This document shows, one piece after another, positions 7,928 to 32,968 of a stretch of 64,000 nucleotides of DNA. The position numbers and the translations under genes were made by a program. The notes under the pieces were generated by a model. That model ran no database searches. It worked only from the letters and a program-made list of their open reading frames with translations, and had not been told where the DNA came from. Within the stretch, counting starts at the first letter, position 1, and every line of letters starts with the position of its first letter. Where the stretch lies: IMG/VR virus record IMGVR_UViG_3300020810_001156, positions 186,001 through 250,000 of that record, one strand, 5' to 3'.

Positions 7928-7928
7928 T

Positions 7929-8285: not shown

Positions 8286-8291
8286 GAAGTT

Positions 8292-10679: not shown

Positions 10680-11656
10680 AAGTAGCTTTTCTAACGGAAA
10701 TGGGATTTGAGGGAACTATTCCCAATGAACATCCAAACGCTAGAACTGAGTTTGCTTGGATGAACGCTTTAGATGCGGTTCATTACCCATTAACAAAATA
10801 CCAATCGGTAAGTGGATATGATGTTGTGTTTATCATCTTCCCAAAAGGTAAACTATTTTTATCAGCAGAGGGTTCTAAAATAGGAGAAGGATTCAATCCA
10901 GCTTCTCAATATCTAAATGAACCAATAGTAGATACTTTAAAGAGTGTAAACAAAAAAGTATATTATATTCAAGAAGGACCTCATTGGTGGTGGAATGATT
11001 ATGAGATTGTAGACCAAATTCAGTTCTATAATTTTTTAACAAAAACCGATGGTATCTTTGCACACAATGAATCCGATGTAAATTACTATAAAGGATTGTT
11101 ACCAAATAAAAAAATAAAAGTGATTAGAACCTTAATGATTGAAGATTTGATTAAAAACATAAAATCACAATCTGAAGATAAGGTGTTGATTGGTGGTAAC
11201 TTTGCAAGGTGGTATGGTGGATTCGAATCCTATATGGTAGCAACCGAATTTGGTGTTCCTATTTGGGGACAAGAATCTCATGCTAAGCGAAGTAACGAAG
11301 GAGCAATGGAAGATTTGAATCACTTTGATAGAATGGTTTGGATTGATTGGATGAAAGAAGTATCTAAGTTCAAATATGGGGTTCATCTAATGCCAACTGT
11401 AGCAGCTGGTACATTCTCACTTAATTGTGCATACTTTGGAATACCTGTAATTGGTAACATCAAAGTAGATACTCAAAAAACACTACATCCACTAACTTCA
11501 GTTGAAGTTGATGATGTGAAAGGTGCTAGAGAATTAGCTCAGAAATTAAGAGATGATAAAGATTTCTACAATCAATGTAGTAAGTTGGCTAGACAACAAT
11601 ATCAAAGTTATTACACCAAAGAAATTTGGTTAAATTATATGAAAGAAAGAATATGA
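10676..11656 (+). CDS. Putative glycosyltransferase (GT-B-like)
   Basis: C-terminal AAGTFSLNCAYFGIPVIG resembles a GT-B donor-binding segment; cluster context. Confidence 0.6.
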   Translation: MKVAFLTEMGFEGTIPNEHPNARTEFAWMNALDAVHYPLTKYQSVSGYDVVFIIFPKGKLFLSAEGSKIGEGFNPASQYLNEPIVDTLKSVNKKVYYIQEGPHWWWNDYEIVDQIQFYNFLTKTDGIFAHNESDVNYYKGLLPNKKIKVIRTLMIEDLIKNIKSQSEDKVLIGGNFARWYGGFESYMVATEFGVPIWGQESHAKRSNEGAMEDLNHFDRMVWIDWMKEVSKFKYGVHLMPTVAAGTFSLNCAYFGIPVIGNIKVDTQKTLHPLTSVEVDDVKGARELAQKLRDDKDFYNQCSKLARQQYQSYYTKEIWLNYMKERI

Positions 11657-12423
11657 TTACAGCAGTACTAAATGGTTACAAACGAGGAGATAACCTCAAC
11701 GAACAATTGGAAGCGTTAAAAAATCAAACCTTACCACCTGATGAGATTTTATTATGGTACAATAATCCAGGTGATAATGATTTATTAAATTATGATATTG
11801 GTGGTGAAATACCAGTAGCTTATTGTAATTACAACTTTGGGGTTTGGGCAAGATTCTACTTTGCTATGAACGCTAGAAATCCATATGTAGTGGTATTTGA
11901 TGATGATACAATTCCGGGTAAAAAGTGGTTAGAAAATTGTATGAACACAATGAATGAAAGGGAGGGTTTATTAGGTACTGTTGGATTACTTTATCCAAAT
12001 CCTCTCCCACCACAAAATTCTTCTTATTATGAACACTACCTCAGATTTGGCTGGCCAGAATTAGGTAACAATGATAGAACTGTTCAAGTTGATTTAGTTG
12101 GACATAGTTGGTTCTTCAAAAAAGAATGGTTATCTCATATGGTAAGAGAATTGCCTGACCCAAAATACAATACTTGCGGTGAGGATATGCACTTCTCTTA
12201 TATGTTACAAAAGTACGCTAATATTCCTACATTTGTACCACCACACCCTCGTTCAGATATGGAACTTTGGGGAAGTATTAAGGGTGGTGAGTATGGTGGA
12301 GATGTTAACTCTCTTTGGGAATCAAATCAAGTAAATGTAGAAGGTACACCATTCAAACAATTGATGAATCAATATTTTCACGAACAAAGAAATAAAGGCT
12401 GGAAATTAGTAAATGAAAAATAA
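11653..12423 (+). CDS. Glycosyltransferase, GT-A fold
   Basis: GYKR..L..Q, FDDD (DxD) and CGEDMHFS. Confidence 0.75.
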   Translation: MITAVLNGYKRGDNLNEQLEALKNQTLPPDEILLWYNNPGDNDLLNYDIGGEIPVAYCNYNFGVWARFYFAMNARNPYVVVFDDDTIPGKKWLENCMNTMNEREGLLGTVGLLYPNPLPPQNSSYYEHYLRFGWPELGNNDRTVQVDLVGHSWFFKKEWLSHMVRELPDPKYNTCGEDMHFSYMLQKYANIPTFVPPHPRSDMELWGSIKGGEYGGDVNSLWESNQVNVEGTPFKQLMNQYFHEQRNKGWKLVNEK

Positions 12424-13414
12424 ACCAATATTACTCTGCTTTGGGACAAGACCCGAATGGTTGAAAATTAAACCATTGATTAAACTTATGGATAGAAGTG
12501 AATATAAACTTCTATTCACAGGTCAACACCCTGATTTGTTGAAGGATGTGGAAGTTGATTATCAAATCAATATGAGTACAACTAACAATAGATTGGACTC
12601 TATCATTTCAGATTGTATGATTCAATTTCCAAATGGAGATTTTAAAGGTGTATTGGTACAGGGAGACACCGGTTCAGCATTTGGTTGCGCATTAGCCGCA
12701 TTTAATAGACAAATCCGAATCTATTATTTGGAAGCAGGATTAAGGAGTGGTGATTTACAACACCCATATCCTGAAGAAGGTTATAGACAGATGATTGCAA
12801 GAATCGCTGATGTAAACTTTACACCAACTGAATTATCGGCACAAAATCTTAAAGATGAAAAAGTACATGGAAGTATCTACACAGTTGGAAACTCAGTATT
12901 AGATAACTTAGTAGATTTTCCAAAACCTACAATGGAAAATATTATTTTGATTACTTTACATCGTAGAGAAAATCACCATTGGATGGATAAATGGTTTGAG
13001 GAGATTGAAAAACTTGCAGTTGAATATCCACATTATACATTTGTATTACCAATTCACCCAAACCCAAATGTAAAGAAACATAGACACATTTTAAAGAATG
13101 TAACTGTGGTAGAACCAATGGAACATACGCATATGATTAATACTCTAATCAAATCAAACCTAATCATTTCAGATAGTGGTGGTTTGCAAGAAGAGGGTTC
13201 ATTCTTCAATAAGAAAGTAATTGTATGTAGAAAAACAACCGAAAGACCTGAAGGTATAGAAACAGGTCATTTACATTTGTGTGATTCTCCTGAAGATTTG
13301 GGTGAATTATTTGGAAAACTAATAGAAAATCCGTATATTAGTGAAAATTGTCCTTATGGGGATGGATATACTTCACAAGCGGTATTAGAAATATTAAGAA
13401 ATGAAGAACTTTAG
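12413..13414 (+). CDS. wecB: UDP-N-acetylglucosamine 2-epimerase (non-hydrolysing)
   Basis: GTRPE.LK, TGQH, VQGDT, EAGLRS, PEE..R, TLHRREN, SDSGGLQEE, TERPE and PYGDG. Confidence 0.95.
   Translation: MKNKPILLCFGTRPEWLKIKPLIKLMDRSEYKLLFTGQHPDLLKDVEVDYQINMSTTNNRLDSIISDCMIQFPNGDFKGVLVQGDTGSAFGCALAAFNRQIRIYYLEAGLRSGDLQHPYPEEGYRQMIARIADVNFTPTELSAQNLKDEKVHGSIYTVGNSVLDNLVDFPKPTMENIILITLHRRENHHWMDKWFEEIEKLAVEYPHYTFVLPIHPNPNVKKHRHILKNVTVVEPMEHTHMINTLIKSNLIISDSGGLQEEGSFFNKKVIVCRKTTERPEGIETGHLHLCDSPEDLGELFGKLIENPYISENCPYGDGYTSQAVLEILRNEEL
13310..13341 (+). promoter_or_regulatory. Bacteroidota-type promoter inside the wecB 3' end
   Basis: TTTGGA...CGTATATTAG with an exact 20-bp spacer, about 60 nt before the next start codon. 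Confidence 0.55.
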
Positions 13415-14177
13415 AGGAGATTTTGTAAAACTAAAAACCAAATTAGAGAATCAAGAACACTTTGCATTCTCTCGTTATTCTGATGGTGAAATGTATATTC
13501 TACAAAATAAAGAATTGGTGTTGGATAATGGGTTGATTCAAATTGGTGATGAGAAGCAAGGTGGTGTTTATCAACCTGCTGATTTCAAACATTTTGACCC
13601 AAAAGAACATTCGTTTTACCAACAAAAGTTAGTGGAATCACTTCAGTACAAACAACCAAACTATTATAGAGGAATTAGTTGTAGTTGTTGTGTAGGTAAG
13701 GAACAATTTGATTGGCAAGTTGATTTAGCTGGTGGGGATGATGAAACTCTAACTTGGGCAAATCTTTGGGTAAATGGAAACTATCCTTTATTCATTACAC
13801 ACATTCTACCAATCCTTTATAGTAGAGATTGTGTATTCGTTGGACATGAAGATGCAAACTTAGATAGATTACCATTCTTTGTGAAAGATTTTAGAGTAGG
13901 TTACAACGCAATGATTAATGATTATGGAAAAATTGAAGAAATGGCTGAGTGGATTAAAGAAAACAACATTGAAAATCATGTATTCCTTTTCTCAGCATCC
14001 ACATTTACAAACTTGGCAGTATATCAGTTGTTCAGAGAGTTTCCTAATAATACCTATATTGATATTGGAACTTGTCTTACTCCTATGATGGATATGCCAA
14101 CACATAGGGGTTATTTACAAGCCTTTTGGAATTATAGACCTAATCAAGATATTCAAAAAGTATGCATATGGAATTAG
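13401..14177 (+). CDS. Putative GT-D fold glycosyltransferase (DUF1792-like)
   Basis: FSRYSDGE and YIDIG motifs resemble DUF1792 (RFGDGE ... IDIG). Confidence 0.6.
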   Translation: MKNFRGDFVKLKTKLENQEHFAFSRYSDGEMYILQNKELVLDNGLIQIGDEKQGGVYQPADFKHFDPKEHSFYQQKLVESLQYKQPNYYRGISCSCCVGKEQFDWQVDLAGGDDETLTWANLWVNGNYPLFITHILPILYSRDCVFVGHEDANLDRLPFFVKDFRVGYNAMINDYGKIEEMAEWIKENNIENHVFLFSASTFTNLAVYQLFREFPNNTYIDIGTCLTPMMDMPTHRGYLQAFWNYRPNQDIQKVCIWN

Positions 14178-14551
14178 TAGAATGTAGTAAAGAATATTGG
14201 GAATTCGTAAGAGTTCTTAGAAATGATGAAAGAGTTCAAAGTGGATTTATTCACAACAATTTTATCACCGAAGAAATGCAAAAAAAGTATATGAGTGGAA
14301 ACTCACAATACTATCGTATTGCTTTAGTAGATGGAGTGCCCGCTGGTTATGTGGGTGTTATCGAAGATGATATTAGAGTATGCACTGACCCTTTCTTTCA
14401 AGGTAAAGGAGTTGGTAAGTTTATGATAAATGAAATTATGAAAGAATATCCAACTGCATTTGCAAAAGTAAAAATAGATAATGAAGCAAGTTTGAGATTA
14501 TTTAGAAGTTGTGGATTTAAAAAGAAATTTTATATACTAACAAAAGATTAA
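14162..14551 (+). CDS. GNAT N-acetyltransferase (PseH-like)
   Basis: Acetyl-CoA loop FQGKGVG and N.AS..LF...GF; next to an aminotransferase. Confidence 0.85.
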   Translation: MHMELVECSKEYWEFVRVLRNDERVQSGFIHNNFITEEMQKKYMSGNSQYYRIALVDGVPAGYVGVIEDDIRVCTDPFFQGKGVGKFMINEIMKEYPTAFAKVKIDNEASLRLFRSCGFKKKFYILTKD

Positions 14552-14552
14552 G

Positions 14553-15179
14553 ATGAAACATAATCCATATAAAATCGTAAGAATGTTTGAAGAGGAGATT
14601 GCTGAATACACAGGTGCTCCCTATGCTATCTCAGTAGATAGTTGTACAAACGCACTATTTTTGGTTTGTAAGTGGATGGGAGTTAATGAAGTTACCATTC
14701 CATCTAAAACTTACTTATCAGTTCCTCAATCAATCACACACGCTGGTGGTGAGGTTATCTTTGATAAAAGAGCAGAAACAAATCATTGGAACGGAATGTA
14801 TCAATTGAAACCATACCCAATTTGGGATGCAGCTAAAAGATTGACAAGTGGGATGTATGTAGAAGGGCAGTTTATGTGTTTATCTTTCCACATCAAAAAA
14901 CTACTTCCAATTTGGAAAGGTGGTATGATTCTAACCGATAACGCTGAAGCAGCAGATTGGTTTAAGAAAGCAAGATATGAAGGTAGAAGTGAAAAGTACT
15001 ATAAAGATGATGATATCACATTCCACGGATGGAATATGTATATGACACCTCAACAAGCTGCACATGGATTGGCTATGTTCCAAAACTATCCTGAACATAT
15101 GAGTGATTTGGGTGAAGATAACGGATATAGAGATTTAACTGAATTTACGGTATTTAAAAATCATAGAACAATCGAATGA
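14553..15179 (+). CDS. Compact DegT/DnrJ/EryC1/StrS sugar aminotransferase
   Basis: FEEEIAEY.G, SCTNAL, DAA and the PLP-lysine motif SFHIKK...GGMILT. Only 208 aa. Confidence 0.85.
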   Translation: MKHNPYKIVRMFEEEIAEYTGAPYAISVDSCTNALFLVCKWMGVNEVTIPSKTYLSVPQSITHAGGEVIFDKRAETNHWNGMYQLKPYPIWDAAKRLTSGMYVEGQFMCLSFHIKKLLPIWKGGMILTDNAEAADWFKKARYEGRSEKYYKDDDITFHGWNMYMTPQQAAHGLAMFQNYPEHMSDLGEDNGYRDLTEFTVFKNHRTIE

Positions 15180-15796
15180 AAGTAATCATAGGTGGTATGG
15201 GGTTGAGTGGTAGCACTTTGTGTTATAATATATTTAGAGTTTTAAGAGATAACTCTGAATTGAATTATGAAGTCATAAAGATACATGAATATAATCATGC
15301 AGCTACTATGGGAAAAACTATTTTTATGATTAGAGATTTAAGAGATACTGTTGCATCTATGTTAAGGAAAGACCCAGAAAGATGGAATGGTGATGTTGAA
15401 GAAGCATCTAAGTATCAAATGATGTGGTACTATGATACTTGGAAAGATGTAAATAAAGATATTGTTTGGAAATATGAAGAGTATAAATCGAATCCATATG
15501 AACACACTTACTCAGCTATTAGTAAATTGGGATTGAATGTATCATATGATTTAGTAAAACAGGTTATAGATACTTGTGAAAATATAAAAGATATGAATAT
15601 TCCACATCACCAAGATTTTATACAAACTGAAGAAGAAGCTATTTTATGGGAAACCACAAAGATGAGTAAAAAACATATTACCAATGGTGGTAAGATTGGT
15701 GGATATAAAGAATATTTAACCGAAGAGCAAATTAGATTTATTGAAACAAAATATAAATACTTTTTTGAAGAACAAAATTATCAGTTAGATTATTAA
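15176..15796 (+). CDS. Sulfotransferase-domain protein
   Basis: GM.LSGST, RDLRDTVAS, KYEE and G.IGGYKEYLTEEQ. Confidence 0.65.
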   Translation: MKVIIGGMGLSGSTLCYNIFRVLRDNSELNYEVIKIHEYNHAATMGKTIFMIRDLRDTVASMLRKDPERWNGDVEEASKYQMMWYYDTWKDVNKDIVWKYEEYKSNPYEHTYSAISKLGLNVSYDLVKQVIDTCENIKDMNIPHHQDFIQTEEEAILWETTKMSKKHITNGGKIGGYKEYLTEEQIRFIETKYKYFFEEQNYQLDY

Positions 15797-15800
15797 AAAT

Positions 15801-16526
15801 ATGAAAGTAGCACTTTGTTTACATGGCTTATTTGATTCTTTGACAGATGAAAATTCAAAGGGATTGGATGGTTATAATCATATCAAAAAAAATATTTTGG
15901 ATGTGGTTGATACCGATGTATTTGTACACAGTTGGGAAATTGAAAAAATGGATGAGATTACTAAATTATATAATCCAAAATCTTCCATATTTGAAGGACA
16001 GAAAGATTTTACTAATATAATAAACAAAAACAAATTAAACACATTATCAGCTCCACCAAGACCACCATTTAGTGTTTTATCTCATCTTTATAGTGTAACT
16101 GAATCTATGAAGTTGGCATTTAATAGTGAGGTTGAATATGATATTATCATTAAGGCAAGATTTGATTTAGGAAGAATTAATAGAAGAACATCTGGGCCGG
16201 GTAGAGGTAATCCATATCCAGTTCAATGTATCAATTTTCAAACTGATATTGAAAAAGATAAGATTTATATGGCGAATTGGCAACACTTTCATATGGGACC
16301 TGCTGATATGTGGTTTTATGGTTCATCAAAAGTAATGAATCCTTTCACAACTTTATACAAATCGGTAGAAAAAAATATGAAGTTAGGTGGTGAGTTTCAT
16401 CAATTCGCTACATCAATAGAAGGTAATCCAAATGATTTATCGAATGCTATTGCATTTTATAAATGGTGGATGATAGGAAATGGATTATGGAATAAAAAAA
16501 TAAAATTAGATACAATATGGGAATAA
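15801..16526 (+). CDS. Putative glycan transferase (WavE-related family)
   Basis: KVALCLHG, DVFVHSWE, YDIIIKARFD and DMWFYG. Confidence 0.55.
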   Translation: MKVALCLHGLFDSLTDENSKGLDGYNHIKKNILDVVDTDVFVHSWEIEKMDEITKLYNPKSSIFEGQKDFTNIINKNKLNTLSAPPRPPFSVLSHLYSVTESMKLAFNSEVEYDIIIKARFDLGRINRRTSGPGRGNPYPVQCINFQTDIEKDKIYMANWQHFHMGPADMWFYGSSKVMNPFTTLYKSVEKNMKLGGEFHQFATSIEGNPNDLSNAIAFYKWWMIGNGLWNKKIKLDTIWE

Positions 16527-17215
16527 ACGTACCTTTAATAATTTATACACATTCGGATTATAAAGATGTGTGGAAACTTTTATTTGGTCAGTTAAAAAAA
16601 TACTTACCAAATCAAAAAGTATATGTTTTAAGTGATTCTAATGCAGAAGAAATACCATCGAATTATACTACAATAGTTTACGATGATTCTAAAGTTTATA
16701 CTGATAGATTAAAACAATGTCTTTCTCAGATTAATGAAGATGTGGTTCTATTTCAGCATGAGGATATGGTTCTTTTTAATGAACCTAAATTTGAATTGTT
16801 TGATAAGTACATAGATTATGTTAAAAATGAGATGGTTGATAGTGTTAAGTTGATTTATGTCCAAGAAAACGATGTGGTATCTGAATTAGATTCTACATTA
16901 ATTTCTAATTCATATTCTAAATTTTCTATTCAACCTACTTTGATAAAATTAAAAAATTTCGTATCTTTGTTAGATTCAACCGAACCTTTAAATATTTGGG
17001 ATTTTGAATTAGCAGTTCCTGCTGAAGGAAAACACTATATGGTAAGATTGGGTGATGAGAAAAAACGAGGATTATATCACTCTGATAGTATCATATATCC
17101 TTACATAGCAACTGCTATTACAAAAGGAAAGTGGAACTATGGTGAATATTCATTTGAATTCGATAAATTATTTAATGAATATGGTATTATACCATTTGAA
17201 AGAGGAATTTCATAA
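16517..17215 (+). CDS. Hypothetical protein, possibly GT-A-like
   Basis: HED, IWDFE and AITKGKW motifs; cluster context. Confidence 0.45.
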   Translation: MGINVPLIIYTHSDYKDVWKLLFGQLKKYLPNQKVYVLSDSNAEEIPSNYTTIVYDDSKVYTDRLKQCLSQINEDVVLFQHEDMVLFNEPKFELFDKYIDYVKNEMVDSVKLIYVQENDVVSELDSTLISNSYSKFSIQPTLIKLKNFVSLLDSTEPLNIWDFELAVPAEGKHYMVRLGDEKKRGLYHSDSIIYPYIATAITKGKWNYGEYSFEFDKLFNEYGIIPFERGIS

Positions 17216-17823
17216 TGAATAAAATAAAATTTGATATTGGTGCTAATAGTGGAAGTGATACTAGAAGAATGGCTTCGGATGGTTCTATTGTTTACGCATT
17301 TGAACCAACACATGAATTATTAATGAATCATCTCTGGCCACTTTCTAATCAGAATCCAAATATAAAAGTTATACCATTTGCGGTTGATGTTAAAAACTCA
17401 TTCCAAACATTCAATATTTCTGCAAATAGAGATTGGGGTTGTAGTAGTTTATATGAGTTTTCCGATGATATAGAGAAGAAATGGCCAAACAGACCCGATT
17501 TCAAAAAAACTCATTCTTATGAAGTTCCTACAATAACTTTATATGATTTTTGTAATTTGTATAACATAGATAGGATTGATATGTTACACATAGATGCACA
17601 GGGTAATGATTTTAATGTTCTATTGAGTTTAAAAGACAAAATATCAATAGTTAAAGAAGGGGTGGTTGAAGCATCTGATAAAGTTGATTTATACAGTGGA
17701 GCTACCAATAGAATAGAATACATAAGATATTTTTTAATATCGAATGGATTTAAGATTGTAAAAGAAACACCTAACGATGTTGTAGGTGCCGAAGTTAATA
17801 TAAGGTTTATAAAAAATGATTAA
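17215..17823 (+). CDS. FkbM family methyltransferase
   Basis: FDIGANSG, YAFEP, SSL and LHIDAQG.D..VL. Confidence 0.9.
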   Translation: MNKIKFDIGANSGSDTRRMASDGSIVYAFEPTHELLMNHLWPLSNQNPNIKVIPFAVDVKNSFQTFNISANRDWGCSSLYEFSDDIEKKWPNRPDFKKTHSYEVPTITLYDFCNLYNIDRIDMLHIDAQGNDFNVLLSLKDKISIVKEGVVEASDKVDLYSGATNRIEYIRYFLISNGFKIVKETPNDVVGAEVNIRFIKND

Positions 17824-19180
17824 GTTAGTTATATTTGATTTGGATGGTGTTCTTGTTGAAGCAAAAAACATCCACTATGATGCACTCAATGAAGCTTTGG
17901 GTGAACAATACGCAATTAGTTGGGCTGAACACCTATCAACTTACGATGGATTAAAAACCAATCAAAAGTTGGAGATGTTGAGTGAGATAAAAGGATTACC
18001 AACCGAACTACACAAAGAGATTTGGGAAGGTAAACAAAAATTGACATTACAAAAGTTGAAAGAGTTAAAACCAAACCAAACTCTACAATCGGTAATGAAC
18101 GCATTGGTTGAGGATGGATACAAAATAGCAGTTTGTTCCAATTCAATCAGAAAGACAGTTTTGACTGTACTTTCAAAGTTGGGTATTATGGAGTTTATGG
18201 ATTACATCATCTCAAACGAAGATGTACAAAACTCTAAACCACACCCTGAGATGTATTGGAGAGCAATCTCAAAGATGGGATGTTTACCATCTGAAACTCT
18301 AATCGTAGAGGATTCACCTTATGGGTTACTTGCAGCATCTCGTTCTAACGCTCATGTGTTGAGAGTTAGAAATCCACAAGAAGTAACCTACACAAACATA
18401 TTTAAAAAATTAACTGAAATAGAAATGGGACAAACAAATGATAAACCAAAATGGGTGGATAATAAGTTAAATGTATTAATTCCAATGGCTGGAGCTGGTA
18501 GTAGATTCCAACAAGCAGGATACACATTTCCAAAACCACTAATTGATGTGGAAGGTAAACCTATGATTCAGGTCGTGGTAGAAAATCTAAACATCGAAGC
18601 AAATTATATCTATGTAGTTCAGAAATCACATAGGGAGAAATTCAATTTGGATACCTTACTTAATCTTATTACTCCTAATTGTAAGATTGTAGAAGTAGAT
18701 GGTATTACCGAAGGAGCAGCTTGTACTGCACTTTTGGCTAAAGAACATATTGATAACGATAATCCATTATTCTTCGCTAACTCAGACCAATTTGTAGAAT
18801 GGGATTCAAATGAGTTCTTCTACAAAATGAATGAGAACGATGCTGATGGTGGTATCCCAACATTCAAAGCAACTCACCCAAAGTGGTCATTTGCTAAGTT
18901 GGATGAAGATGGTTTTGTGACCGAAGTGCAAGAGAAAAACCCAATCTCAGATTTAGCAACAGTGGGTTTCTATTATTGGAAACATGGTTCTGATTTTGTG
19001 AAATACGCTGAAGAAATGATTGAGCAGGATATTAGAGTAAACAATGAATTCTATGTTTGTCCTGTTTACAACAACGCAATTAAAGGTGGATTAAAGGTGA
19101 GAACATTTGATGTACCAAAGATGTGGGGACTTGGAACACCTGAAGATTTGAATAGATACTTAGAGAATTATGGTAAGTAG
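17816..19180 (+). CDS. HAD phosphatase fused to a nucleotidyltransferase
   Basis: N-terminal DLDGVL, KPHP and VEDS; C-terminal IPMAGAGSRF..PKPLI and GLGTPEDL. Confidence 0.9.
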   Translation: MIKLVIFDLDGVLVEAKNIHYDALNEALGEQYAISWAEHLSTYDGLKTNQKLEMLSEIKGLPTELHKEIWEGKQKLTLQKLKELKPNQTLQSVMNALVEDGYKIAVCSNSIRKTVLTVLSKLGIMEFMDYIISNEDVQNSKPHPEMYWRAISKMGCLPSETLIVEDSPYGLLAASRSNAHVLRVRNPQEVTYTNIFKKLTEIEMGQTNDKPKWVDNKLNVLIPMAGAGSRFQQAGYTFPKPLIDVEGKPMIQVVVENLNIEANYIYVVQKSHREKFNLDTLLNLITPNCKIVEVDGITEGAACTALLAKEHIDNDNPLFFANSDQFVEWDSNEFFYKMNENDADGGIPTFKATHPKWSFAKLDEDGFVTEVQEKNPISDLATVGFYYWKHGSDFVKYAEEMIEQDIRVNNEFYVCPVYNNAIKGGLKVRTFDVPKMWGLGTPEDLNRYLENYGK

Positions 19181-19859
19181 TGATAACAAATATACCAAAA
19201 TGCAAAAGGGTGCGTATAGAAGTGGAACTTCTAACCATCCTGAGCATAATGGTAATCCCGATTATTGGAATATTCTTTTAGGTGATTTAAAAGATAGAGA
19301 TAGTTGGGTAAATAAAGTTGGTTTAGATTTTGCTTGTGGTAAGGGTAGAAATGTAACAAATATGTTATCTTTATCCGATTGGAAACGAATTGATGGTATT
19401 GATATCTCAGAAGCTAACATTGTTTATTGTAAGGAAAATTATAAAGGACAAGATAGTGATTGGTATGTAAATAATGGAGTTGATGTATCTCAATTGAAAA
19501 ATAACGAATATGATTTCATCATGTCAACCATCGCACTACAACATATTCCAGTATATGATATCAGAAAATCACTAATAACCGATTTACTTAGAACTTTGAA
19601 ACCAGGTGGAATATTTTCATTCCAAATGGGATATGGTCAGGAAATAAAACCAAATGAAAATAGATATCCATACCACACAAACCATTATGATGCTGGTGGA
19701 ACTAATTCACATTCTGATGTGAGGGTACAAAGTGAATCTGAAATTATAGAAGATTTAACAAACATTGGATTTATCAATATAGAAACATATGTGAGAGATA
19801 CATTCTCAGATAATGGACATCCTCAATGGATATATGTAAAAGCTTATAAACCAGAATAA
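19170..19859 (+). CDS. Class I SAM-dependent methyltransferase
   Basis: LDFACGKG, GIDIS, ALQHI and LKPGG. Confidence 0.9.
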   Translation: MVSSDNKYTKMQKGAYRSGTSNHPEHNGNPDYWNILLGDLKDRDSWVNKVGLDFACGKGRNVTNMLSLSDWKRIDGIDISEANIVYCKENYKGQDSDWYVNNGVDVSQLKNNEYDFIMSTIALQHIPVYDIRKSLITDLLRTLKPGGIFSFQMGYGQEIKPNENRYPYHTNHYDAGGTNSHSDVRVQSESEIIEDLTNIGFINIETYVRDTFSDNGHPQWIYVKAYKPE

Positions 19860-21089
19860 ATGAAAAGAATAACATTTGTAATACCTTGTAGAAGTAATCT
19901 ACCATATCTACAACAAGCCGTAGGTTCTATTGAAGAACACTATGGTAATTCGCATGATGTGGTAATCTTAGATGATGCATCTGATGATAATAGTTGGAAT
20001 TGGATTACTGAATACTCAGAAGGTAGGGATAATATAATCGCTTATAGAAACGAAGGACCTGATAGAGTTGGACACACTGTATTGTATGATGTTGGTTTTG
20101 ATTTAGCAAAAACCGAAGTAGTATCAATTCTACACTCGGATATGGTGGTAACACCAAACTATGTGGAAAATATGTTGAAACACTTAGAAGTAAAAAAGGT
20201 AGTTTCAGCAACTCGAATTGAACCACCACTTCATCCACCTGGTCCTGAAAAGTATGTACAAAACTTTGGATTAGAAGTAGATGAGTTCTCAGAACAAAAA
20301 GAAAACTTTTTAAACTTCGTATCACAAAAGGAAATAGAAAATGAGGGTAAAGTTACTGATGGTATATTTGCACCTTGGATGATGTACAAAGAAGATTTTG
20401 TTGATATTGGTGGGCATGATTTCTTATTCGCACCAATGGAGTTAGAAGATTCTGATATCTTTAATAGATTTTTTCTAAATGGATACGAGTTGATTCAAAG
20501 TAGAGATGCATTTGTATATCATATGACTTGTAGGGGTAGTAGGTTCAAAGATGGAATTGAAATTGAAAAAGAAATTCCACTACCCGATGGCACAATTTGG
20601 TACAAACCAAAAGATTCCGAAGAGTACACTATTCTAAGACAACACAAATTTAGAGAATGGTGGAGAAAGTGGCATACTGATGTATTACATGATGAATTTA
20701 TGATGCCAATCGTTCCAAGTAGATATGATACTGGATTTATTGTTAAAAATTGTAATACTCAAATTCTATCCATCTTAGAACCTTGGTGTGATACAATCTA
20801 TGTTGATTGTGATTACAAAGCATATGTAGATGCTGAAAACGAAAAATCTGAATATGATATATCGGAATCGGTTAAACCATATGATAATGAAAAGAACAAT
20901 CACATATTGATTTCATTTGATGCAAGTAAATTAACAAATCAACACTTTACTGAATTCATCAAACAATTACCATTCATCATTGAAGAAACTGGTCAAACTG
21001 GTTCATTTAATTGGGATATCTTTCAAATAGATATTATCTCTTTAGAAGAAGTTGATATGATTAAACCACATTTTAAAAATATATTTTAA
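19860..21089 (+). CDS. Glycosyltransferase family 2
   Basis: FVIP, LDDASDD, HSDM and EDSD. Confidence 0.88.
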   Translation: MKRITFVIPCRSNLPYLQQAVGSIEEHYGNSHDVVILDDASDDNSWNWITEYSEGRDNIIAYRNEGPDRVGHTVLYDVGFDLAKTEVVSILHSDMVVTPNYVENMLKHLEVKKVVSATRIEPPLHPPGPEKYVQNFGLEVDEFSEQKENFLNFVSQKEIENEGKVTDGIFAPWMMYKEDFVDIGGHDFLFAPMELEDSDIFNRFFLNGYELIQSRDAFVYHMTCRGSRFKDGIEIEKEIPLPDGTIWYKPKDSEEYTILRQHKFREWWRKWHTDVLHDEFMMPIVPSRYDTGFIVKNCNTQILSILEPWCDTIYVDCDYKAYVDAENEKSEYDISESVKPYDNEKNNHILISFDASKLTNQHFTEFIKQLPFIIEETGQTGSFNWDIFQIDIISLEEVDMIKPHFKNIF

Positions 21090-25138: not shown

Positions 25139-25399
25139 ATGGGTAAAAAATTAGTTACTATAAAGGTAATAAAGGGAGATATTAATCGAGCTCTTAAAAA
25201 GTTTAAACGAGCGTGTTTTGATTCTGGACACTTACAAGAACTTAGGGAAAGGCAAACATATACTAAACCTAAAACAGTAAGAAGAACGAAAAAGTTAGAA
25301 GCTATCAGAAGGCAAGAGTGGGAAACTTTAAAAGAAAAGATTGATGGTGGGGATACCTCACTAAAATTATCTCCAAGAAAGAAAAAGAAAAAAAGATAA
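25139..25399 (+). CDS. rpsU: Phage-encoded ribosomal protein bS21
   Basis: I.V..GDINRALKKFKR....G.LQELRERQ.YTKP...RR is the S21 signature. Confidence 0.9.
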   Translation: MGKKLVTIKVIKGDINRALKKFKRACFDSGHLQELRERQTYTKPKTVRRTKKLEAIRRQEWETLKEKIDGGDTSLKLSPRKKKKKR

Positions 25400-25416: not shown

Positions 25417-27903
25417 ATGGCAGATAATGTAAAAATATCAGATTTAACGGAATTAATATCGGGCTCTCTTAGAGATGTTACGATTTTTCCGGTTGTAGAT
25501 GGTGGTGCAACCCAAAAAGCTACATTACTATCTCTACAACAATATCTTGCTGATACTTTAGCAACTGATAGTGAATTAACAGCACAAATTTCTAATGTAA
25601 ATTCTACAATAAATGGATTGGATACAGATGATATAAGTGAGGGTTCAACTAATCAGTATTATACAAACGCAAGAGTTAATCAAATAATTCAAGGATTAAC
25701 AATCATAAGTGGTTCGGGTCAAATTGAAGATTTAGGATTTATTTCTTCAGGTACTAATATTGGACCACTAAATATATTTACAGCATCTTACTACGAAGAT
25801 TCTGCATCCTTTGAGACAAGAATTTTAGCAATATCTGCTAGTAGTGGAGATACTACGCCACAAGGAACTGTATCTAGTTCACAACAAATTACCGATTTAG
25901 GGTTTATACAATCATCAACAATTGATTCTTTATTTATTGCAGATAGATTACCAATTGATATTCTATCTTCATCAGAACAATTAGGACAATTAATTGCAAT
26001 TAATGGTGGTACTAATGTAACTGTTACTTCTGGTAGTGGTGACCAATTAAGTATTGAAATTTCATCTACTGGTGGTGGAGGTGGCGGAGTTGAATATGAT
26101 TCTGAATATGAAATCGTTTCACAATCAAACATTACTGATGAATCTAATGCTAGATTGAGTGGTATGTTGATAAGAGCTAATGATGAAACTACATTCGCTA
26201 ACTTCTCAGCATCTGTTGCTGCTGGTGCTGGTGGAGGTGGTGGTTCTACTGATTACATTTCAAATGTATCAAACACAATAGCTCATACAATTTCATTTAC
26301 TGGAGTTGGTTCAGCATTTAATGGAAGTATAAATCTACCCGATGGTATTGTATCATCATCAACTCAAATTGAAGATTTGGGATTTGCTGGTGGTGGAGAA
26401 AACATTATAGTTAGTGGATTACAAGCATATACTCAATCATTAAAATCAGTAGCTATAATTTCTGGCTCACAACAAATTACTGATTTTGGATTCGTTTCAG
26501 AATCATCAACAACTATTCCACAGGGAACTATTTCTGGTTCACAACAAATTACCGATTTAGGATTTCTTAGTAGTTCAGCCGATTTAACTGGTATTACATC
26601 ATCTGCTGGTGTTGTACTTGCTGACGCTGATAACACTGGATTTGATACATCATTTGTAGGAGAGAACCCATCTAACTTATATTATACTGATGCTAGAGTT
26701 GAAACTCACTTAGGGGTTATAGGTTTATTAACAGGTTCACAAGGATTAGCTAGTGGTTCGGTAACTTCATCCGCACAAATTAATTATGGTGAAATTAGAA
26801 ATATTCCTAAATTTTGGGGTGATGGCGTAACTATATCATCTGGTTCATCAGGTGATACTGCAAATTATATCCAAATTACATCAGCTGGTGGTGGTAGTGG
26901 TACATTATCATCCGAGTTCTACTCATTTACCGCATCATATGAATTAGAAAAAGTTAATTTTATAACTGGTTCTTCACAAATTGAAGCTTTAGGATTTGAC
27001 CCTAATGCTGGTGAAGTTGTAACTTTAAACGCTTGGACTGGTTCTGGTGGAGCATTTGGTATATTCTCACAATCAGTAGTAAACCAAATTGAAAACTTAG
27101 AAACTGGTTCACTTACTGATGATTTCAACTCATTATTGGAAAAAGATTTATTCTCAGGTTCTGCTCAAGTTAATTACGCACAAATACCTGATATACCAGA
27201 CTTTGTAGCTGGTCCTGGTATAGTAATCGCAATTAGTGGTAGTTCATTTGGACAAACCTTTGAAATTAGTAGTAGTGCAGCTTCTGGAGATTTTACAACA
27301 TTAACTGGAGTTCCAGAAGGATTAGTATCATCATCAACTCAAATTGAAAATTTAGGATTTGCAACAACTGGATACGCTGATGGTGTTGGTACAACAACTT
27401 CACAATCATTAGAATCAACATTTAATGGATTTAGAGGTGATATAGGTGCTATTCAAGCCGATTACGCTAATTTGGGTGGTAACACATTTACTGGTTCTCA
27501 ATTAATCAAAGCTTTAGTAACAGTTGATGAGGTTTATGTAACTGGTTCATTATCTTTAACTTCTGGTGAGGGTAAAATAAAAGTTAATACTGGGATTCCT
27601 TCGGATATAGTACAAATGACTGGTTCATTTAAAGTAACGGGTTCGATTGAAGCAGATGAGTTTATTGTAGGTTCTGCAGGAACACCAACCATTTCATCAG
27701 CAACTAATATTGAAGTATCGGCATCGGCTGATATTAATATGATAGCTCAGGAAGTTAACATTACTGATGTATTAACAATAACTCCAAGAACAACAACACC
27801 TTCATCACCATCATCTGGTAGTTTTATTGTAAGTGGTAGTGGAGCAACTATAAAGCCATTCTTCTATGATGGCAATCAATGGCAAGAGATATCATTCGTA
27901 TAA
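25417..27903 (+). CDS. Ser/Gly/Thr-rich virion fibre-like structural protein
   Basis: VKISDL N-terminus, EG..N.YYT.ARV repeats, about 10 S(G/S)S.QI.xLGF-type repeats and a FYDG..W C-terminus. Confidence 0.7.
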   Translation: MADNVKISDLTELISGSLRDVTIFPVVDGGATQKATLLSLQQYLADTLATDSELTAQISNVNSTINGLDTDDISEGSTNQYYTNARVNQIIQGLTIISGSGQIEDLGFISSGTNIGPLNIFTASYYEDSASFETRILAISASSGDTTPQGTVSSSQQITDLGFIQSSTIDSLFIADRLPIDILSSSEQLGQLIAINGGTNVTVTSGSGDQLSIEISSTGGGGGGVEYDSEYEIVSQSNITDESNARLSGMLIRANDETTFANFSASVAAGAGGGGGSTDYISNVSNTIAHTISFTGVGSAFNGSINLPDGIVSSSTQIEDLGFAGGGENIIVSGLQAYTQSLKSVAIISGSQQITDFGFVSESSTTIPQGTISGSQQITDLGFLSSSADLTGITSSAGVVLADADNTGFDTSFVGENPSNLYYTDARVETHLGVIGLLTGSQGLASGSVTSSAQINYGEIRNIPKFWGDGVTISSGSSGDTANYIQITSAGGGSGTLSSEFYSFTASYELEKVNFITGSSQIEALGFDPNAGEVVTLNAWTGSGGAFGIFSQSVVNQIENLETGSLTDDFNSLLEKDLFSGSAQVNYAQIPDIPDFVAGPGIVIAISGSSFGQTFEISSSAASGDFTTLTGVPEGLVSSSTQIENLGFATTGYADGVGTTTSQSLESTFNGFRGDIGAIQADYANLGGNTFTGSQLIKALVTVDEVYVTGSLSLTSGEGKIKVNTGIPSDIVQMTGSFKVTGSIEADEFIVGSAGTPTISSATNIEVSASADINMIAQEVNITDVLTITPRTTTPSSPSSGSFIVSGSGATIKPFFYDGNQWQEISFV

Positions 27904-27914: not shown

Positions 27915-29525
27915 ATGAGAACCTACAATGTAATACTCAAAAAAGGTGTAGATTATGAATCGTTTTGGGATGATATGGAAAATGAAAACGATGGGGGTAA
28001 TCTTTATATCCCTAATCGTAGAGTAGATTCTCCTAACCTTAGACCAGATTCACAAAGACAAACTTGGTACACTCTTTCGGATGAAGAAGCTGAAACTGTA
28101 AGAAATGATGAAAGAGTTCTTGCAGTTGAAATTCCACCCGAAGATAGGGATGATATCGTAATTGGACATCATGCAATCCAAGAGGGTGTATTTACCAAAA
28201 CAACTTCTGATAGTGGTAATTATCAAAATTGGGGATTAATAAGAACTTTATCTAAATCAAATAATTATGGTAGTTCAAATACCTCACCAACTACTGAATA
28301 TCCATATTCATTAACTGGTAAGGGGGTTGATGTTGTAATTCAAGATAGTGGTATTCAAATAGACCATCCAGAATGGGCAGATAGATTTGAATCGGTAGAT
28401 TGGGATACATGGGGTGCTTTTACACAATCATCAAATCACGATAGAGATTATGATGGACATGGTTCACATTGTGCTGGTATTGTAGCAGGTAAAACATTTG
28501 GGTATGCTAAAAAAGCAAAAGTATATCATCAAAAGATAAGTGGATTAGAAGGTAGTGGTGATAGTGGAACTGGTATTTCACCAACCTATGCATTTGATGC
28601 TATTAAAGGTTGGCATAATGCTAAATCAGTTGACCCAAATACTGGGTATGTTAGACCAACTGTGGTAAATATGAGTTGGGGTTATCTGAGAACATTTACA
28701 AATGCTCAAATATCAAACATAAATTATAGAGGTACTGATTATAGTGGTACTGATATTGATACTACAACTGAAAGAGAAAACAATTACGGATTGATGTATT
28801 CATTGTATTCAGTATCAGGTCCAACATATGCTAGTAATTTAAGAATAGCATCGGTTGATACTGATATTGAAGAGTTGTTAGAAGCGGGTGTTCATGTGTT
28901 TGTTGCTGCTGGAAATAGGAGTAATAAAGTAGATGAGAGTGGTGGTGCGGATTATGATAATAATTATACACACACATCATCGGGTACAACTTACTATCAC
29001 AGAGGTTCTTCTCCATATGGTGATGCAGGGCAAGATGGAACTGGACCAAGAGCAATCATAGTTGGTAATATGGATTCATCAGTACATGATACCACAACTG
29101 ATAGAAAAGCAACATCATCGGAAACTGGACCTGGTGTTGATATCTATGCACCTGGTACAAATGTTATGAGTGCAACTTCTAATACAAATAAGTGGGGAAG
29201 TGGTTCTCAAAATTATTATTTGAATTCATCATTTAAGCAAACTAATATATCTGGTACATCTATGGCATCTCCTCAAGTTGCAGGTGTTGCTGCATGTATT
29301 TTAGAATTATATCCACAATGGACACCATCTCAATTAAAACAATGGTTACTGGATAATGCAGGTTCTGCAATCTTAAATACTGGTACTGATAATGATTGGA
29401 CAAATGATAGAAGTTTGAAAGGTGGAGCAGAAAAAGTATTACATTTACCATTTACTTCATCAGAACCTGCAAAAATAAGTGGTTTCGATAATTTAACCTT
29501 TAACATAAAAATCAAAGAACAATAA
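27915..29525 (+). CDS. Subtilisin-like S8 serine protease
   Basis: Catalytic triad motifs QDSG, HGSHCAG and SGTSMASPQVAG; oxyanion motif AAGN. Confidence 0.93.
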   Translation: MRTYNVILKKGVDYESFWDDMENENDGGNLYIPNRRVDSPNLRPDSQRQTWYTLSDEEAETVRNDERVLAVEIPPEDRDDIVIGHHAIQEGVFTKTTSDSGNYQNWGLIRTLSKSNNYGSSNTSPTTEYPYSLTGKGVDVVIQDSGIQIDHPEWADRFESVDWDTWGAFTQSSNHDRDYDGHGSHCAGIVAGKTFGYAKKAKVYHQKISGLEGSGDSGTGISPTYAFDAIKGWHNAKSVDPNTGYVRPTVVNMSWGYLRTFTNAQISNINYRGTDYSGTDIDTTTERENNYGLMYSLYSVSGPTYASNLRIASVDTDIEELLEAGVHVFVAAGNRSNKVDESGGADYDNNYTHTSSGTTYYHRGSSPYGDAGQDGTGPRAIIVGNMDSSVHDTTTDRKATSSETGPGVDIYAPGTNVMSATSNTNKWGSGSQNYYLNSSFKQTNISGTSMASPQVAGVAACILELYPQWTPSQLKQWLLDNAGSAILNTGTDNDWTNDRSLKGGAEKVLHLPFTSSEPAKISGFDNLTFNIKIKEQ

Positions 29526-32084: not shown

Positions 32085-32570
32085 ATGGCAAAAGGTAACA
32101 TATACTGGTTTACAGGCCAACCGGCTCACGGAAAAACTGTACTCGGTAAGAAGTTAGTCGAACTCCTCCAAACCGAGAAAAGAAATTGGAGAAAAGATGT
32201 ATTCCATGTAGATGGTGATGACCTAAGAGCCCTCACTGTAAATAAAGATTATTCAGAACAAGGTAGAATTGATAACATTCGTAGAGCTCAGATGATTGCT
32301 GAGTATCTTTGTAATAACGAATGTGATGTGGTCGTATCATTAGTAGCACCTTATGAATGGTTAAGAGAAGAATTTAAAGAAAGAATCGGTTTAGATAATT
32401 TTCAAGAGTTCTATGTACATTGCGCTACTCCAAGAGAAAGAGACCACTTCCATGCAAAGGATTATGTAGCACCTCAAAAGAATTTTTTTGATGTTGATAC
32501 TACAAAAGACAATCCGAATCAATCATTCACAAAAATCGTAAATCATTTAAGAGAAACAAATAAGTTATAA
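32085..32570 (+). CDS. cysC: Adenylylsulfate (APS) kinase
   Basis: WFTG....GKT, DGDDLR, R..NIRR and SLVAPY...RE. Confidence 0.85.
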   Translation: MAKGNIYWFTGQPAHGKTVLGKKLVELLQTEKRNWRKDVFHVDGDDLRALTVNKDYSEQGRIDNIRRAQMIAEYLCNNECDVVVSLVAPYEWLREEFKERIGLDNFQEFYVHCATPRERDHFHAKDYVAPQKNFFDVDTTKDNPNQSFTKIVNHLRETNKL

Positions 32571-32968
32571 TGGCAAATTTTCAAGCAAAAGCAGACAAAG
32601 AGAGTTCCTCTACGGAAAAGAAATATTCAGTATTTTTCGGGAGATGGCAACCATTTCACAAAGGTCACTATTGGCTAATTAATGAAAGGTTGAAAGAAGG
32701 AAAAAATGTGTGGGTAGCAATCAGAGATGTAAAACCTGATGAGAAAAACCCTTGGACAGCACATGAAATAATGATGAACCTTTCAGAGGAATTAAAAGAC
32801 CTCATTGAAGAAGGTAAAATCTTTTTATCAATTGTTCCTGATATTGAATCAATCAATTATGGAAGAGGGGTAGGATACGATGTAATTGAACACGTACCAC
32901 CACAAGAAATAGGTGAAATCTCTGCAACTTCTATTAGAGAACAAATGAAAAAAGATGGTAAGTTATAA
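32570..32968 (+). CDS. HIGH-family nucleotidyltransferase (cytidyltransferase-like)
   Basis: GRWQPFHKGH and ISATSIRE. Confidence 0.85.
   Translation: MANFQAKADKESSSTEKKYSVFFGRWQPFHKGHYWLINERLKEGKNVWVAIRDVKPDEKNPWTAHEIMMNLSEELKDLIEEGKIFLSIVPDIESINYGRGVGYDVIEHVPPQEIGEISATSIREQMKKDGKL

What the first reader, a model, noticed from the sequence alone, without database searches (positions are those of the whole stretch)
25417..27903. Candidate phage O-glycosylation sequon [S/T]-x-S saturating a virion fibre protein
Seen: by hand I count 19 SGS/TGS tripeptides in 828 aa, plus a similar number of SAS/TAS/SSS/TSS/SQS/TQS. They occur inside the S(G/S)S.QI.xLGF repeats and also in unrelated contexts (ISGSL, FTASY, FSQSV, WTGSG, VTGSL, MTGSF), usually after a hydrophobic residue. 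Recurrence in non-homologous contexts suggests selection on a short linear motif rather than simple duplication. Inference: this is the acceptor sequon for the neighbouring phage glycosyltransferases, giving a self-encoded virion glycan coat distinct from the host D-(S/T)-hydrophobic O-glycosylation motif.
Basis: partly seen in the sequence, partly recalled or inferred. Interest (0 to 1): 0.78.

Follow-up and report, generated by a model that had tools for sequence, protein, structure and literature searches.

The report
Serine-glycine-serine-rich fibre protein of a marine jumbo phage
The counted Ser/Thr-Gly-Ser excess in this 828-residue phage fibre-like protein is real, conserved and sits next to a large sugar-synthesis gene island. 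The sequence evidence fits a structural turn element of the fibre better than a proven glycosylation site, and only protein chemistry can settle it.

Summary
ORF 25417-27903 (828 aa) has 19 [ST]GS against 3.7 expected from its own composition (z about 8) and 32 hydrophobic-[ST]-x-S against 9.3. None of the other 71 ORFs in the window is enriched. The excess survives masking of the main internal repeat and persists in homologues down to about 30% identity.

The protein is a modular fibre-like protein of an uncultured 252-kb marine jumbo phage and matches no curated family. It lies between a soluble glycan-synthesis island (five glycosyltransferase-like genes plus sugar-modifying enzymes) and an APS kinase. 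The nearer part of that arrangement recurs in distant relatives.

No test gave evidence specific to a sequon:
- All three positions, the Gly included, are the most conserved residue class in the protein.
- The motif holds fixed positions in about four structural modules.
- In a neighbouring fibre protein of a related contig it is one spelling of a strict six-residue periodic turn, interchangeable with x-G-N.
- It is neither avoided nor enriched in the other proteins of the window.

The best reading is a structural turn element (about 0.6). A glycosylation acceptor remains possible (about 0.15) and cannot be tested by sequence. Two monomer structure predictions failed, so the motif has no 3D placement.

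The parts
25417..27903 (+). 828-aa fibre-like protein carrying the [ST]GS excess
   Evidence: 379 metagenomic homologues. No Pfam, PHROG or PDB sequence match.
25417..25701 (+). Conserved N-terminal region (aa 1-95), the best conserved part of the family. It holds the first copy of the N-x-Y-Y-T-x-A-R-V motif.
   Evidence: 12 of the 21 invariant columns of alignment A1 lie here. This region alone recovers loci L005-L008. It has weak similarity to cyanophage 'YadA domain-containing structural protein' genes, E about 1, which is a lead only.
25705..25740 (+). QI..LGF repeat, copy 1 (I-S-G-S-G-Q-I-E-D-L-G-F)
   Evidence: Repeat family D1; protein-level repeat.
25870..25905 (+). QI..LGF repeat, copy 2
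26350..26385 (+). QI..LGF repeat, copy 3
26458..26493 (+). QI..LGF repeat, copy 4
26530..26565 (+). QI..LGF repeat, copy 5
26962..26997 (+). QI..LGF repeat, copy 6
27325..27360 (+). QI..LGF repeat, copy 7
25966..26001 (+). Degenerate copy of the same repeat (aa 184-195, S-S-S-E-Q-L...)
   Evidence: alignment; S-x-Q is invariant across the 10 aligned units.
26764..26799 (+). Degenerate copy (aa 450-461, T-S-S-A-Q-I-N-Y...)
   Evidence: [ST]xS is kept in 100% of distant homologues.
27154..27189 (+). Degenerate copy (aa 580-591, S-G-S-A-Q-V-N-Y...)
26008..26067 (+). Strand-SGS-strand module, copy 1 (aa 198-217)
   Evidence: The low-confidence AF2 model places strands 201-204 and 212-215 on either side of S-G-S. 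DNA repeat D6.
26818..26886 (+). Strand-SGS-strand module, copy 2 (aa 468-490)
   Evidence: D6.
27211..27276 (+). Strand-SGS-strand module, copy 3 (aa 599-620)
   Evidence: D6.
27484..27900 (+). C-terminal beta-rich region (aa 690-828) with the T-G-S-hydrophobic-x-hydrophobic units and a small terminal domain
   Evidence: Alignment A2. It is the only part of the first AF2 model with pLDDT 70-82. Weak profile match to strands of the trimeric beta-helix spike of T5 pb4, E 0.059. The best structural match is a tailspike N-terminal domain, Z 4.2, which is weak.
25139..25399 (+). Ribosomal protein S21 homologue, 17 nt upstream. Conserved neighbour of the fibre gene.
27915..29525 (+). Subtilase (S8) protein, 11 nt downstream. 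Conserved neighbour in most relatives.
   Evidence: The same position is occupied in L002, L003 and L011.
6536..21089 (+). Glycan-synthesis island. Genes: GT1/GT4-like 6536, GT 8292, GT2 10050, GT2 11626, UDP-GlcNAc 2-epimerase 12413, GNAT 14162, DegT fragment 14553, sulfotransferase-like 15176 (below the Pfam cut-off), FkbM methyltransferase 17215, HAD + nucleotidyltransferase 17816, methyltransferase 19170, GT2 19860.
   Evidence: No predicted membrane segment in any of them. The same order is seen in a relative.
32085..32968 (+). APS kinase and a cytidylyltransferase-like gene downstream of the fibre gene
   Evidence: An APS kinase follows the fibre gene in L010 and L011.

Best explanation
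The ORF encodes a modular, probably trimeric, fibre or receptor-binding-type protein of an uncultured marine jumbo phage. The tripeptide hydrophobic-[S/T]-G-S is a structural element of that fibre: a tight turn or cap with a small residue, Gly, then a small residue. It recurs at a fixed position in each of about four short building modules:
- the hydrophobic-[ST][GS]S-x-Q-I..LGF unit;
- a strand-SGS-strand unit;
- [F/Y]-[ST]-[AQ]-S units, which I suspected to be helix starts;
- the C-terminal T-G-S-hydrophobic-x-hydrophobic units.

Shown: the excess, its specificity to fibre proteins, its conservation, and its fixed register within modules. Inferred: the turn or cap role and the trimeric state. 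No reliable 3D model could be obtained.
For: 1. The three motif positions are the most conserved residue class in distant homologues. Identity is 0.51, 0.60 and 0.56, against 0.33 for hydrophobic residues and 0.38 for all S/T or all G. The middle Gly is as constrained as the serines and is replaced almost only by S or A.
2. The contexts are not unrelated. They fall into recurring modules.
3. The same excess marks seven fibre-region proteins of an unrelated myovirus contig (z 4.6-15.6) but not its capsid, adaptor, sheath or tube proteins. It is about 2-fold across 74 Ser-rich large ORFs of 79 other phage fibre loci.
4. In L016:6737-8089, 15 successive Gly are spaced exactly 6 residues apart (autocorrelation 0.78 at lag 6). 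[S/T]-G-S occupies the same register as x-G-N, which also explains the hydrophobic residue before the motif.
5. The C-terminal T-G-S-I-T/E-A-D-x-F-I-V-G unit aligns weakly (E 0.059) with N-G-T-I-T-A-D-K-I-V-A-G, which follows the decoration-domain insert (residues 484-626) of the trimeric beta-helix spike of T5 pb4.
6. About 80% of substitutions at the third position lose the hydroxyl (T 21%, A+N+G 47%), much as for ordinary serines.
7. The motif is neither avoided nor enriched in the other 71 ORFs of the window. That fits poorly with a three-residue motif sufficing for cytoplasmic modification.
8. Fibre identity: a distant homologue lies between the head-tail adaptor and tail-fibre genes. Relatives carry C1q or PTL_trimer heads in place of this C-terminus.
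Against: - No structure was obtained. AF2 monomer models of the whole protein (pLDDT 44) and of residues 296-440 (pLDDT 47) are unreliable.
- No solved structure contains the main repeat.
- T4 long tail fibre proteins show no such excess, so it is not a general property of fibres.
- The strong preference for Ser over Thr at position 3, and recurrence in several different modules, are also what an enzyme recognition motif would give.
- The gene sits inside a conserved island of soluble glycan enzymes.
Confidence: 0.6

Rival explanations
1. One reading: the Ser of hydrophobic-[S/T]-x-S is O-glycosylated in the cytoplasm by the phage's own soluble glycosyltransferases, giving a glycan-coated fibre. 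This may be combined with the structural reading, with the turn acting as a structural sequon, as with autotransporter heptosyltransferases (my own knowledge).
For: - The excess is real, Ser-specific at position 3, strongly conserved, and found only in fibre proteins.
- The fibre gene lies between five glycosyltransferase-like genes with sugar-modifying enzymes upstream and an APS kinase downstream. All lack membrane segments, and I recognised no flippase, polymerase or initiating transferase in the window.
- The nearer part of the arrangement (nucleotidyltransferase, GT2, fibre gene, APS kinase) recurs in distant relatives. The full upstream island recurs in one relative.
- The best solved relative of GT 6536 is a chlorovirus glycosyltransferase, E 1.6e-8.
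- Virion glycosylation by phage enzymes is known in mycobacteriophages (Freeman et al. 2023, as cited in PMC12619734).
Against: - No direct evidence of modification.
- The Gly is as conserved as the serines, and the motif has a fixed register in periodic modules where x-G-N replaces it.
- Substitutions do not favour Thr.
- There is no avoidance in non-target proteins.
- None of the glycosyltransferases reaches the cut-off of a protein-glycosylating family.
- The co-occurrence test had no power. The relatives checked that far upstream carry sugar genes, and the comparison phage HTVC008M carries some too.
- The island could instead serve DNA or host surface modification.
Confidence: 0.15
2. The count is a by-product of Ser/Gly-rich composition or of recent internal duplication, with no selection on the tripeptide.
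For: The protein is rich in S, G and T and holds internal repeats.
Against: - No shuffle in 2000 reaches the observed count.
- z is 6.4 after masking the main repeat.
- The DNA copies are 62-87% identical and use both AGY and TCN serine codons.
- The excess persists in homologues at 30-40% identity.
- Other S/G-rich ORFs of the window are not enriched.
Confidence: 0.03
3. The motif marks another modification or processing event, such as phosphorylation, direct sulfation, or cleavage and maturation by the subtilase encoded 11 nt downstream.
For: An S8 subtilase follows the fibre gene in most relatives. An APS kinase and a weak sulfotransferase-like gene are in the neighbourhood.
Against: - No evidence links these enzymes to the motif.
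- The subtilase is absent from the L010 relative, although that fibre is enriched in the hydrophobic-[ST]xS form (z 5-6 in near relatives) and more weakly in [ST]GS (z 4-5).
- 19 to 49 cleavage sites per fibre is implausible.
Confidence: 0.05

Closest known systems
Modular trimeric phage tail fibres and spikes, for example the beta-helix spike of T5 pb4 (PDB 8hre) and tailspikes with exchangeable heads
   Same: - Ser/Gly/Thr-rich, built of short repeated modules.
- A homologue lies in a virion structural module.
- C-terminal heads are swapped among relatives (C1q, PTL_trimer).
- Weak motif-level match of the C-terminal unit to pb4 spike strands.
   Different: - No significant match to any curated fibre family or solved structure.
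- The QI..LGF repeat is undescribed as far as these libraries show.
- T4 fibres lack the tripeptide excess.
- The gene is embedded among sugar genes rather than in a recognised structural module.
Mycobacteriophage virion glycosylation (Freeman et al. 2023, cited in PMC12619734)
   Same: Phage-encoded glycosyltransferases and a virion protein as the presumed target.
   Different: There the glycans sit on C-termini of capsid and tail tube subunits, and modification was shown by experiment. Here the candidate is a fibre with an internal repeated tripeptide, in a phage of an uncultured marine host, and nothing has been measured.
Giant-virus self-encoded glycosylation (chlorovirus capsid, mimivirus fibrils; my own knowledge)
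   Same: A large virus-encoded set of soluble sugar-making and sugar-transferring enzymes. GT 6536 has chlorovirus B736L as its closest solved relative.
   Different: Those are eukaryotic viruses with different target proteins. The similarity is limited to the C-terminal GT-B half at E 1.6e-8.
Bacteroidota general O-glycosylation at D-(S/T)-(A/I/L/V/M/T)
   Same: A three-residue Ser/Thr motif. A Bacteroidota host is plausible but not shown.
   Different: That motif is not enriched here (5 against 4.8 expected). The protein has no signal peptide, so it would not reach the periplasmic machinery.
Periodic beta-solenoid or hexapeptide-type repeats
   Same: In L016:6737-8089 the tripeptide is the turn of a strict six-residue repeat.
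   Different: The target itself shows no global six-residue periodicity. Pfam Hexapep did not match the L016 protein.

Membership tests
Phage tail fibre / receptor-binding fibre | Homologues encoded within a virion structural gene module | tested here: met
   The L004 homologue (26% identity over residues 6-734) lies after the major head and adaptor genes and before tail fibre, sheath and tube genes. In the window itself no capsid or tail gene is nearby.
Phage tail fibre / receptor-binding fibre | Match to a curated fibre family or solved fibre structure | tested here: not met
   No Pfam or PHROG family. No PDB sequence match for the whole profile or the repeat. Only weak hits were found: E 0.059 to T5 pb4 and Z 4.2 to a tailspike N-domain.
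Phage tail fibre / receptor-binding fibre | Exchangeable C-terminal head domains among relatives | tested here: met
   P0061 has a C1q domain. P0038-P0043 carry PF26696, named PTL_trimer.
Phage tail fibre / receptor-binding fibre | Trimeric elongated structure and presence in virions | not testable with these tools
   Only monomer prediction is offered, and both models were unreliable. There is no isolate or proteome.
Protein O-glycosylation sequon served by phage glycosyltransferases | Motif enriched beyond composition in the target protein | tested here: met
   z 8.2, and z 6.4 after masking the repeats.
Protein O-glycosylation sequon served by phage glycosyltransferases | Enrichment tracks the presence of the glycosyltransferases across phages | tested here: inconclusive
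   The relatives carry the same island or at least its nearer genes. HTVC008M also has sugar genes and only a mild excess. T4 has neither. No glycosyltransferase-free complete genome with an enriched fibre could be found.
Protein O-glycosylation sequon served by phage glycosyltransferases | Constraint falls on the acceptor hydroxyl rather than on backbone geometry | tested here: not met
   The Gly is the most conserved position (0.60). At position 3 only 21% of substitutions are Thr, against 47% for Ala, Asn and Gly together.
Protein O-glycosylation sequon served by phage glycosyltransferases | A glycosyltransferase assignable to a protein-glycosylating family | tested here: not met
   Only generic GT1/GT4 and GT2 matches were found. 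All NCBIfam hits are far below their cut-offs.
Protein O-glycosylation sequon served by phage glycosyltransferases | Sugar detected on the serines | not testable with these tools
   Needs mass spectrometry.
Bacteroidota general O-glycosylation | D-(S/T)-(A/I/L/V/M/T) sites on an exported protein | tested here: not met
   5 sites against 4.8 expected. There is no hydrophobic N-terminal segment.
Strictly periodic beta-solenoid (six-residue) repeat protein | Regular Gly and hydrophobic periodicity | tested here: not met
   The target has no lag-6 signal over the whole protein or over residues 690-790. The L016 450-aa protein has it at 0.78.

The most novel reading that the evidence does not exclude
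The fibres of this widespread family of marine jumbo phages, and perhaps of pelagic myoviruses with the same tripeptide excess, are O-glycosylated in the cytoplasm. The acceptor would be the Ser of hydrophobic-[S/T]-G-S turns. The enzymes would be the phage's own soluble glycosyltransferases, and the sugars would be aminated, acetylated, methylated and possibly sulfated by the neighbouring enzymes. As far as I know this would be the first sequon-defined, self-encoded glycan coat on a fibre of a tailed phage.
Probability: 0.13. Interest if true: 0.8.

Novelty: new member of a known kind. Interest (0 to 1): 0.4.

Why it matters
If the motif is only structural, the finding documents an uncharacterised but abundant fibre family. 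It has at least 379 homologues in metagenomes, no curated family, and a clear repeat grammar that could seed a new profile and help annotate receptor-binding proteins of marine phages.

If the fibre is glycosylated, it would extend phage virion glycosylation from mycobacteriophages to marine phages. It would also give a function to the many sugar genes of large marine phages, which are usually filed as auxiliary metabolic genes, and offer a short acceptor motif for glyco-engineering.

The sequence data make the question concrete: which serines, which enzymes, and which control mutants.

Tried and rejected
- **AF2 of the whole protein** with a 42-sequence alignment gave pLDDT 44. **AF2 of residues 296-440** with a 39-sequence alignment gave pLDDT 47. 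Neither places the motif in 3D.
- **Helix-cap idea.** I suspected N-caps from visual inspection.
- **Fold searches** gave only weak matches: best Z 4.2, and the BFVD full-length hits were meaningless.
- **PDB profile searches** with the whole protein and with the 26-residue repeat found nothing.
- **tblastn and megablast against cultured phages** found nothing significant, including with the C-terminal region and an L004 fibre. No glycosyltransferase-free cultured comparator could therefore be found.
- **Co-occurrence test.** I walked upstream in a relative's contig and found the same island. This is uninformative.
- **HTVC008M** as a comparator has sugar genes and only a mild excess.
- **Substitution spectrum at position 3** resembles that of ordinary serines. 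It discriminates only weakly.
- **Host inference** from the TonB-dependent receptor found no close cellular relative.
- **Promoter and terminator scan** around the gene gave nothing above shuffles for promoters.
- **'Moraphage' paper** (PMC12619734): I could not tie this contig to that lineage.
Full report
**What is there.** The window is positions 186,001-250,000 of a 252.6-kb viral contig, IMGVR_UViG_3300020810_001156. It has 32% G+C and nearly all long ORFs are on the + strand. ORF 25417-27903 encodes 828 residues with S 14.9%, G 12.3% and T 10.3%.

**Checking the observation.**
- There are 19 [ST]GS and 18 [ST][AQS]S, and every quoted context is present.
- Against 2000 shuffles of the same protein, [ST]GS is expected 3.7 times (z 8.2), all [ST]xS 30.8 times (49 observed, z 4.1), and hydrophobic-[ST]-x-S 9.3 times (32 observed, z 8.2).
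- The other 71 ORFs of the window pooled give 10 [ST]GS against 9.7 expected, including other Ser/Gly-rich ORFs.
- The third position is Ser-specific: [ST]GT is 2 against 2.6 expected.

The excess is not a by-product of duplication.
- After masking the ten units that fit hydrophobic-[ST][GSA]S-x-Q-[IVL], 13 [ST]GS remain in 579 residues against 2.8 expected (z 6.4).
- The DNA copies of the main repeat are only 62-87% identical and spell the serines with both AGY and TCN codons.
- The excess holds in homologues down to about 30% identity (z 2 to 10).

**What the protein is.** It matches no Pfam or PHROG family and no PDB sequence. It has at least 379 homologues in marine and other metagenomes. 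Four lines point to a phage fibre or receptor-binding-type protein:
- A distant homologue (L004, 26% identity over residues 6-734) lies in a myovirus structural module. That module holds the major head protein, a head-tail adaptor, several fibre proteins, sheath and tube.
- Relatives replace the C-terminus by a C1q domain (P0061) or by PF26696, named PTL_trimer.
- The language-model look-alikes are viral tail-fibre clusters. This is a lead only.
- The C-terminal 84 residues, the only moderately confident part of the model, resemble tailspike N-terminal domains weakly (Z 4.2). A C-terminal unit aligns at E 0.059 with a stretch of the T5 pb4 central fibre, whose C-terminal part forms a trimeric beta-helix spike.

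Membership of a named fibre family is not established. 'Fibre-like' is the supported level.

**Anatomy of the motif.** The contexts are not unrelated. They fall into about four recurring modules:
- 7 canonical and several degenerate hydrophobic-[ST][GS]S-x-Q-I..LGF units;
- three strand-SGS-strand units;
- [F/Y]-[ST]-[AQ]-S-[YVL] units;
- C-terminal T-G-S-hydrophobic-x-hydrophobic units.

In 33 homologues below 55% identity the three motif positions are the most conserved residue class. Identity is 0.51, 0.60 and 0.56, against 0.33 for hydrophobic residues and 0.38 for all S/T or all G. Motif S/T against other S/T is 0.49 against 0.27, P = 1e-6. The middle Gly is replaced almost only by Ser or Ala. 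At the third position 62% stay Ser. Of the substitutions, 21% are Thr and 47% are Ala, Asn or Gly, much like ordinary serines.

**Beyond this protein.**
- T4 gp34-37 show no excess.
- In the L004/L016 myovirus contig, seven fibre-region proteins are enriched (z 4.6 to 15.6), including the 368-, 343- and 450-aa proteins of unknown role. The capsid, adaptor, sheath and tube proteins are not.
- Pelagibacter phage HTVC008M fibres are mildly enriched (z about 3).
- Across 79 further phage fibre loci the tripeptide is about 2-fold over expectation in Ser-rich large ORFs.

The most telling case is L016:6737-8089. Fifteen successive Gly lie exactly six residues apart (autocorrelation 0.78 at lag 6). 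The hexad reads hydrophobic-[S/T/I/K]-G-[S/N]-x-x. There [S/T]-G-S is simply the commonest spelling of a periodic turn, interchangeable with x-G-N, and the hydrophobic residue before it is the last residue of the preceding unit. The target itself lacks global six-residue periodicity, so this is an analogy within the same class of virion proteins and not a proof for the target.

**The neighbourhood.** They are part of a large island:
- GT1/GT4-like 6536 (closest solved relative chlorovirus B736L, E 1.6e-8);
- GT 8292, GT2 10050, GT2 11626 and GT2 19860;
- UDP-GlcNAc 2-epimerase 12413, GNAT 14162 and a DegT fragment 14553;
- a sulfotransferase-like gene 15176 (below the Pfam cut-off), FkbM methyltransferase 17215, HAD plus nucleotidyltransferase 17816 and methyltransferase 19170;
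- downstream of the fibre gene, APS kinase 32085 and a cytidylyltransferase-like gene 32570.

None of these has a predicted membrane segment. I recognised no flippase, polymerase or initiating transferase in the window, though several ORFs remain unannotated. The order nucleotidyltransferase, GT2, S21, fibre, subtilase or APS kinase recurs in relatives whose fibres are only 31-40% identical. One relative's contig shows the upstream island in the same order. This is genuine circumstantial support for the idea that the phage glycosylates some cytoplasmic acceptor. It does not identify the acceptor: DNA and host envelope precursors remain candidates.

**Weighing the two readings.**

For a structural turn or cap:
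- the Gly is as constrained as the serines;
- the register within modules is fixed;
- the motif is equivalent to x-G-N in a strictly periodic relative;
- the C-terminal unit resembles an N-G-T unit of T5 pb4;
- Thr is not preferred on substitution;
- the motif is not avoided in other proteins, so three residues alone are unlikely to suffice for a cytoplasmic enzyme.

For a sequon:
- position 3 is Ser-specific;
- the motif recurs in several module types;
- the excess is restricted to fibre proteins;
- sugar genes flank the fibre gene in distant relatives.

The two are not exclusive, since a conserved turn could be the structural feature an enzyme recognises. No test gave evidence specific to glycosylation. 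The one test that could have refuted it by sequence, an enriched fibre in a genome without glycosylation genes, could not be completed. I found no suitable complete genome, and every relative I could inspect has sugar genes.

I could not place the motif in 3D. Both monomer predictions were unreliable.

The host-type Bacteroidota motif is not enriched and the protein has no export signal.

**Verdict.** The protein is a new, abundant, uncharacterised fibre-like family of marine jumbo phages. The best-supported explanation of the tripeptide is a structural turn element of modular fibres (0.6). The glycosylation sequon is unproven but alive (about 0.15). Composition or duplication alone is rejected.

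I file it as a new member of a known kind. Interest is moderate, because the sequence data turn a vague idea (what the sugar genes of large marine phages are for) into a defined experiment, but they do not answer it.

Noticed in passing
window 25139-25399 (+): A ribosomal protein S21 homologue lies directly upstream of the fibre gene. It holds the same position in distant relatives (L010, L011).
   Followed up: partly
window 47072-49048 (+): A complete TonB-dependent receptor (Plug plus 22-strand-barrel Pfam domains) is encoded by the phage. No close cellular relative was found in one genome per species.
   Followed up: partly
window 59175-60800 (+): A phage-encoded GroEL, about 55% identical to copies in Bacteroides phages. 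Flavobacterium and Cellulophaga phages are among the 255 matching records. This is a hint, not proof, of a Bacteroidota host.
   Followed up: partly
window 38975-41125 and 41239-42450 (+): A VWA/CobT-like protein lies next to a CobS-like AAA ATPase, a pair common in marine phages.
   Followed up: no
window 23865-24113, 24115-24792, 24789-25127 (+): Three consecutive small ORFs share the N-terminus MI(K/R)L(T/D)(E/D)(I/L)L followed by N or H. The middle one matches only the C-terminal ends of several PHROGs of unknown function.
   Followed up: no
window 14553-15179 (+): Only a 208-aa piece of a DegT-type aminotransferase is present. The best match covers profile positions 23-90 of 360. It may be a truncated or split gene.
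   Followed up: no
window 15176-15796 and 32085-32570 (+): A sulfotransferase-like gene (E 4.6e-4, below the Pfam cut-off) and an APS kinase flank the fibre region. The island may make a sulfated product.
   Followed up: no
window 27915-29525 (+): An S8 subtilase lies 11 nt downstream of the fibre gene and is conserved there in most relatives. Part of it matches a PHROG annotated as tail fibre protein. Its role is unknown: fibre maturation or a virion enzyme.
   Followed up: partly
L016:6737-8089 (+): A 450-aa protein in a myovirus fibre module has 15 Gly exactly six residues apart and 19 [ST]GS against 1.3 expected. This is a very regular six-residue repeat that no Pfam model recognised.
   Followed up: yes
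window 6536-7927 (+): The closest solved relative of this GT1/GT4-like enzyme is chlorovirus glycosyltransferase B736L (3oy2), E 1.6e-8 over the C-terminal half.
   Followed up: partly
window 61778-62266 and 61875-62291 (+): Two overlapping ORFs. The first is 16% Ser and 14% Gly but has no [ST]GS at all, which makes it a useful internal negative control.
   Followed up: no
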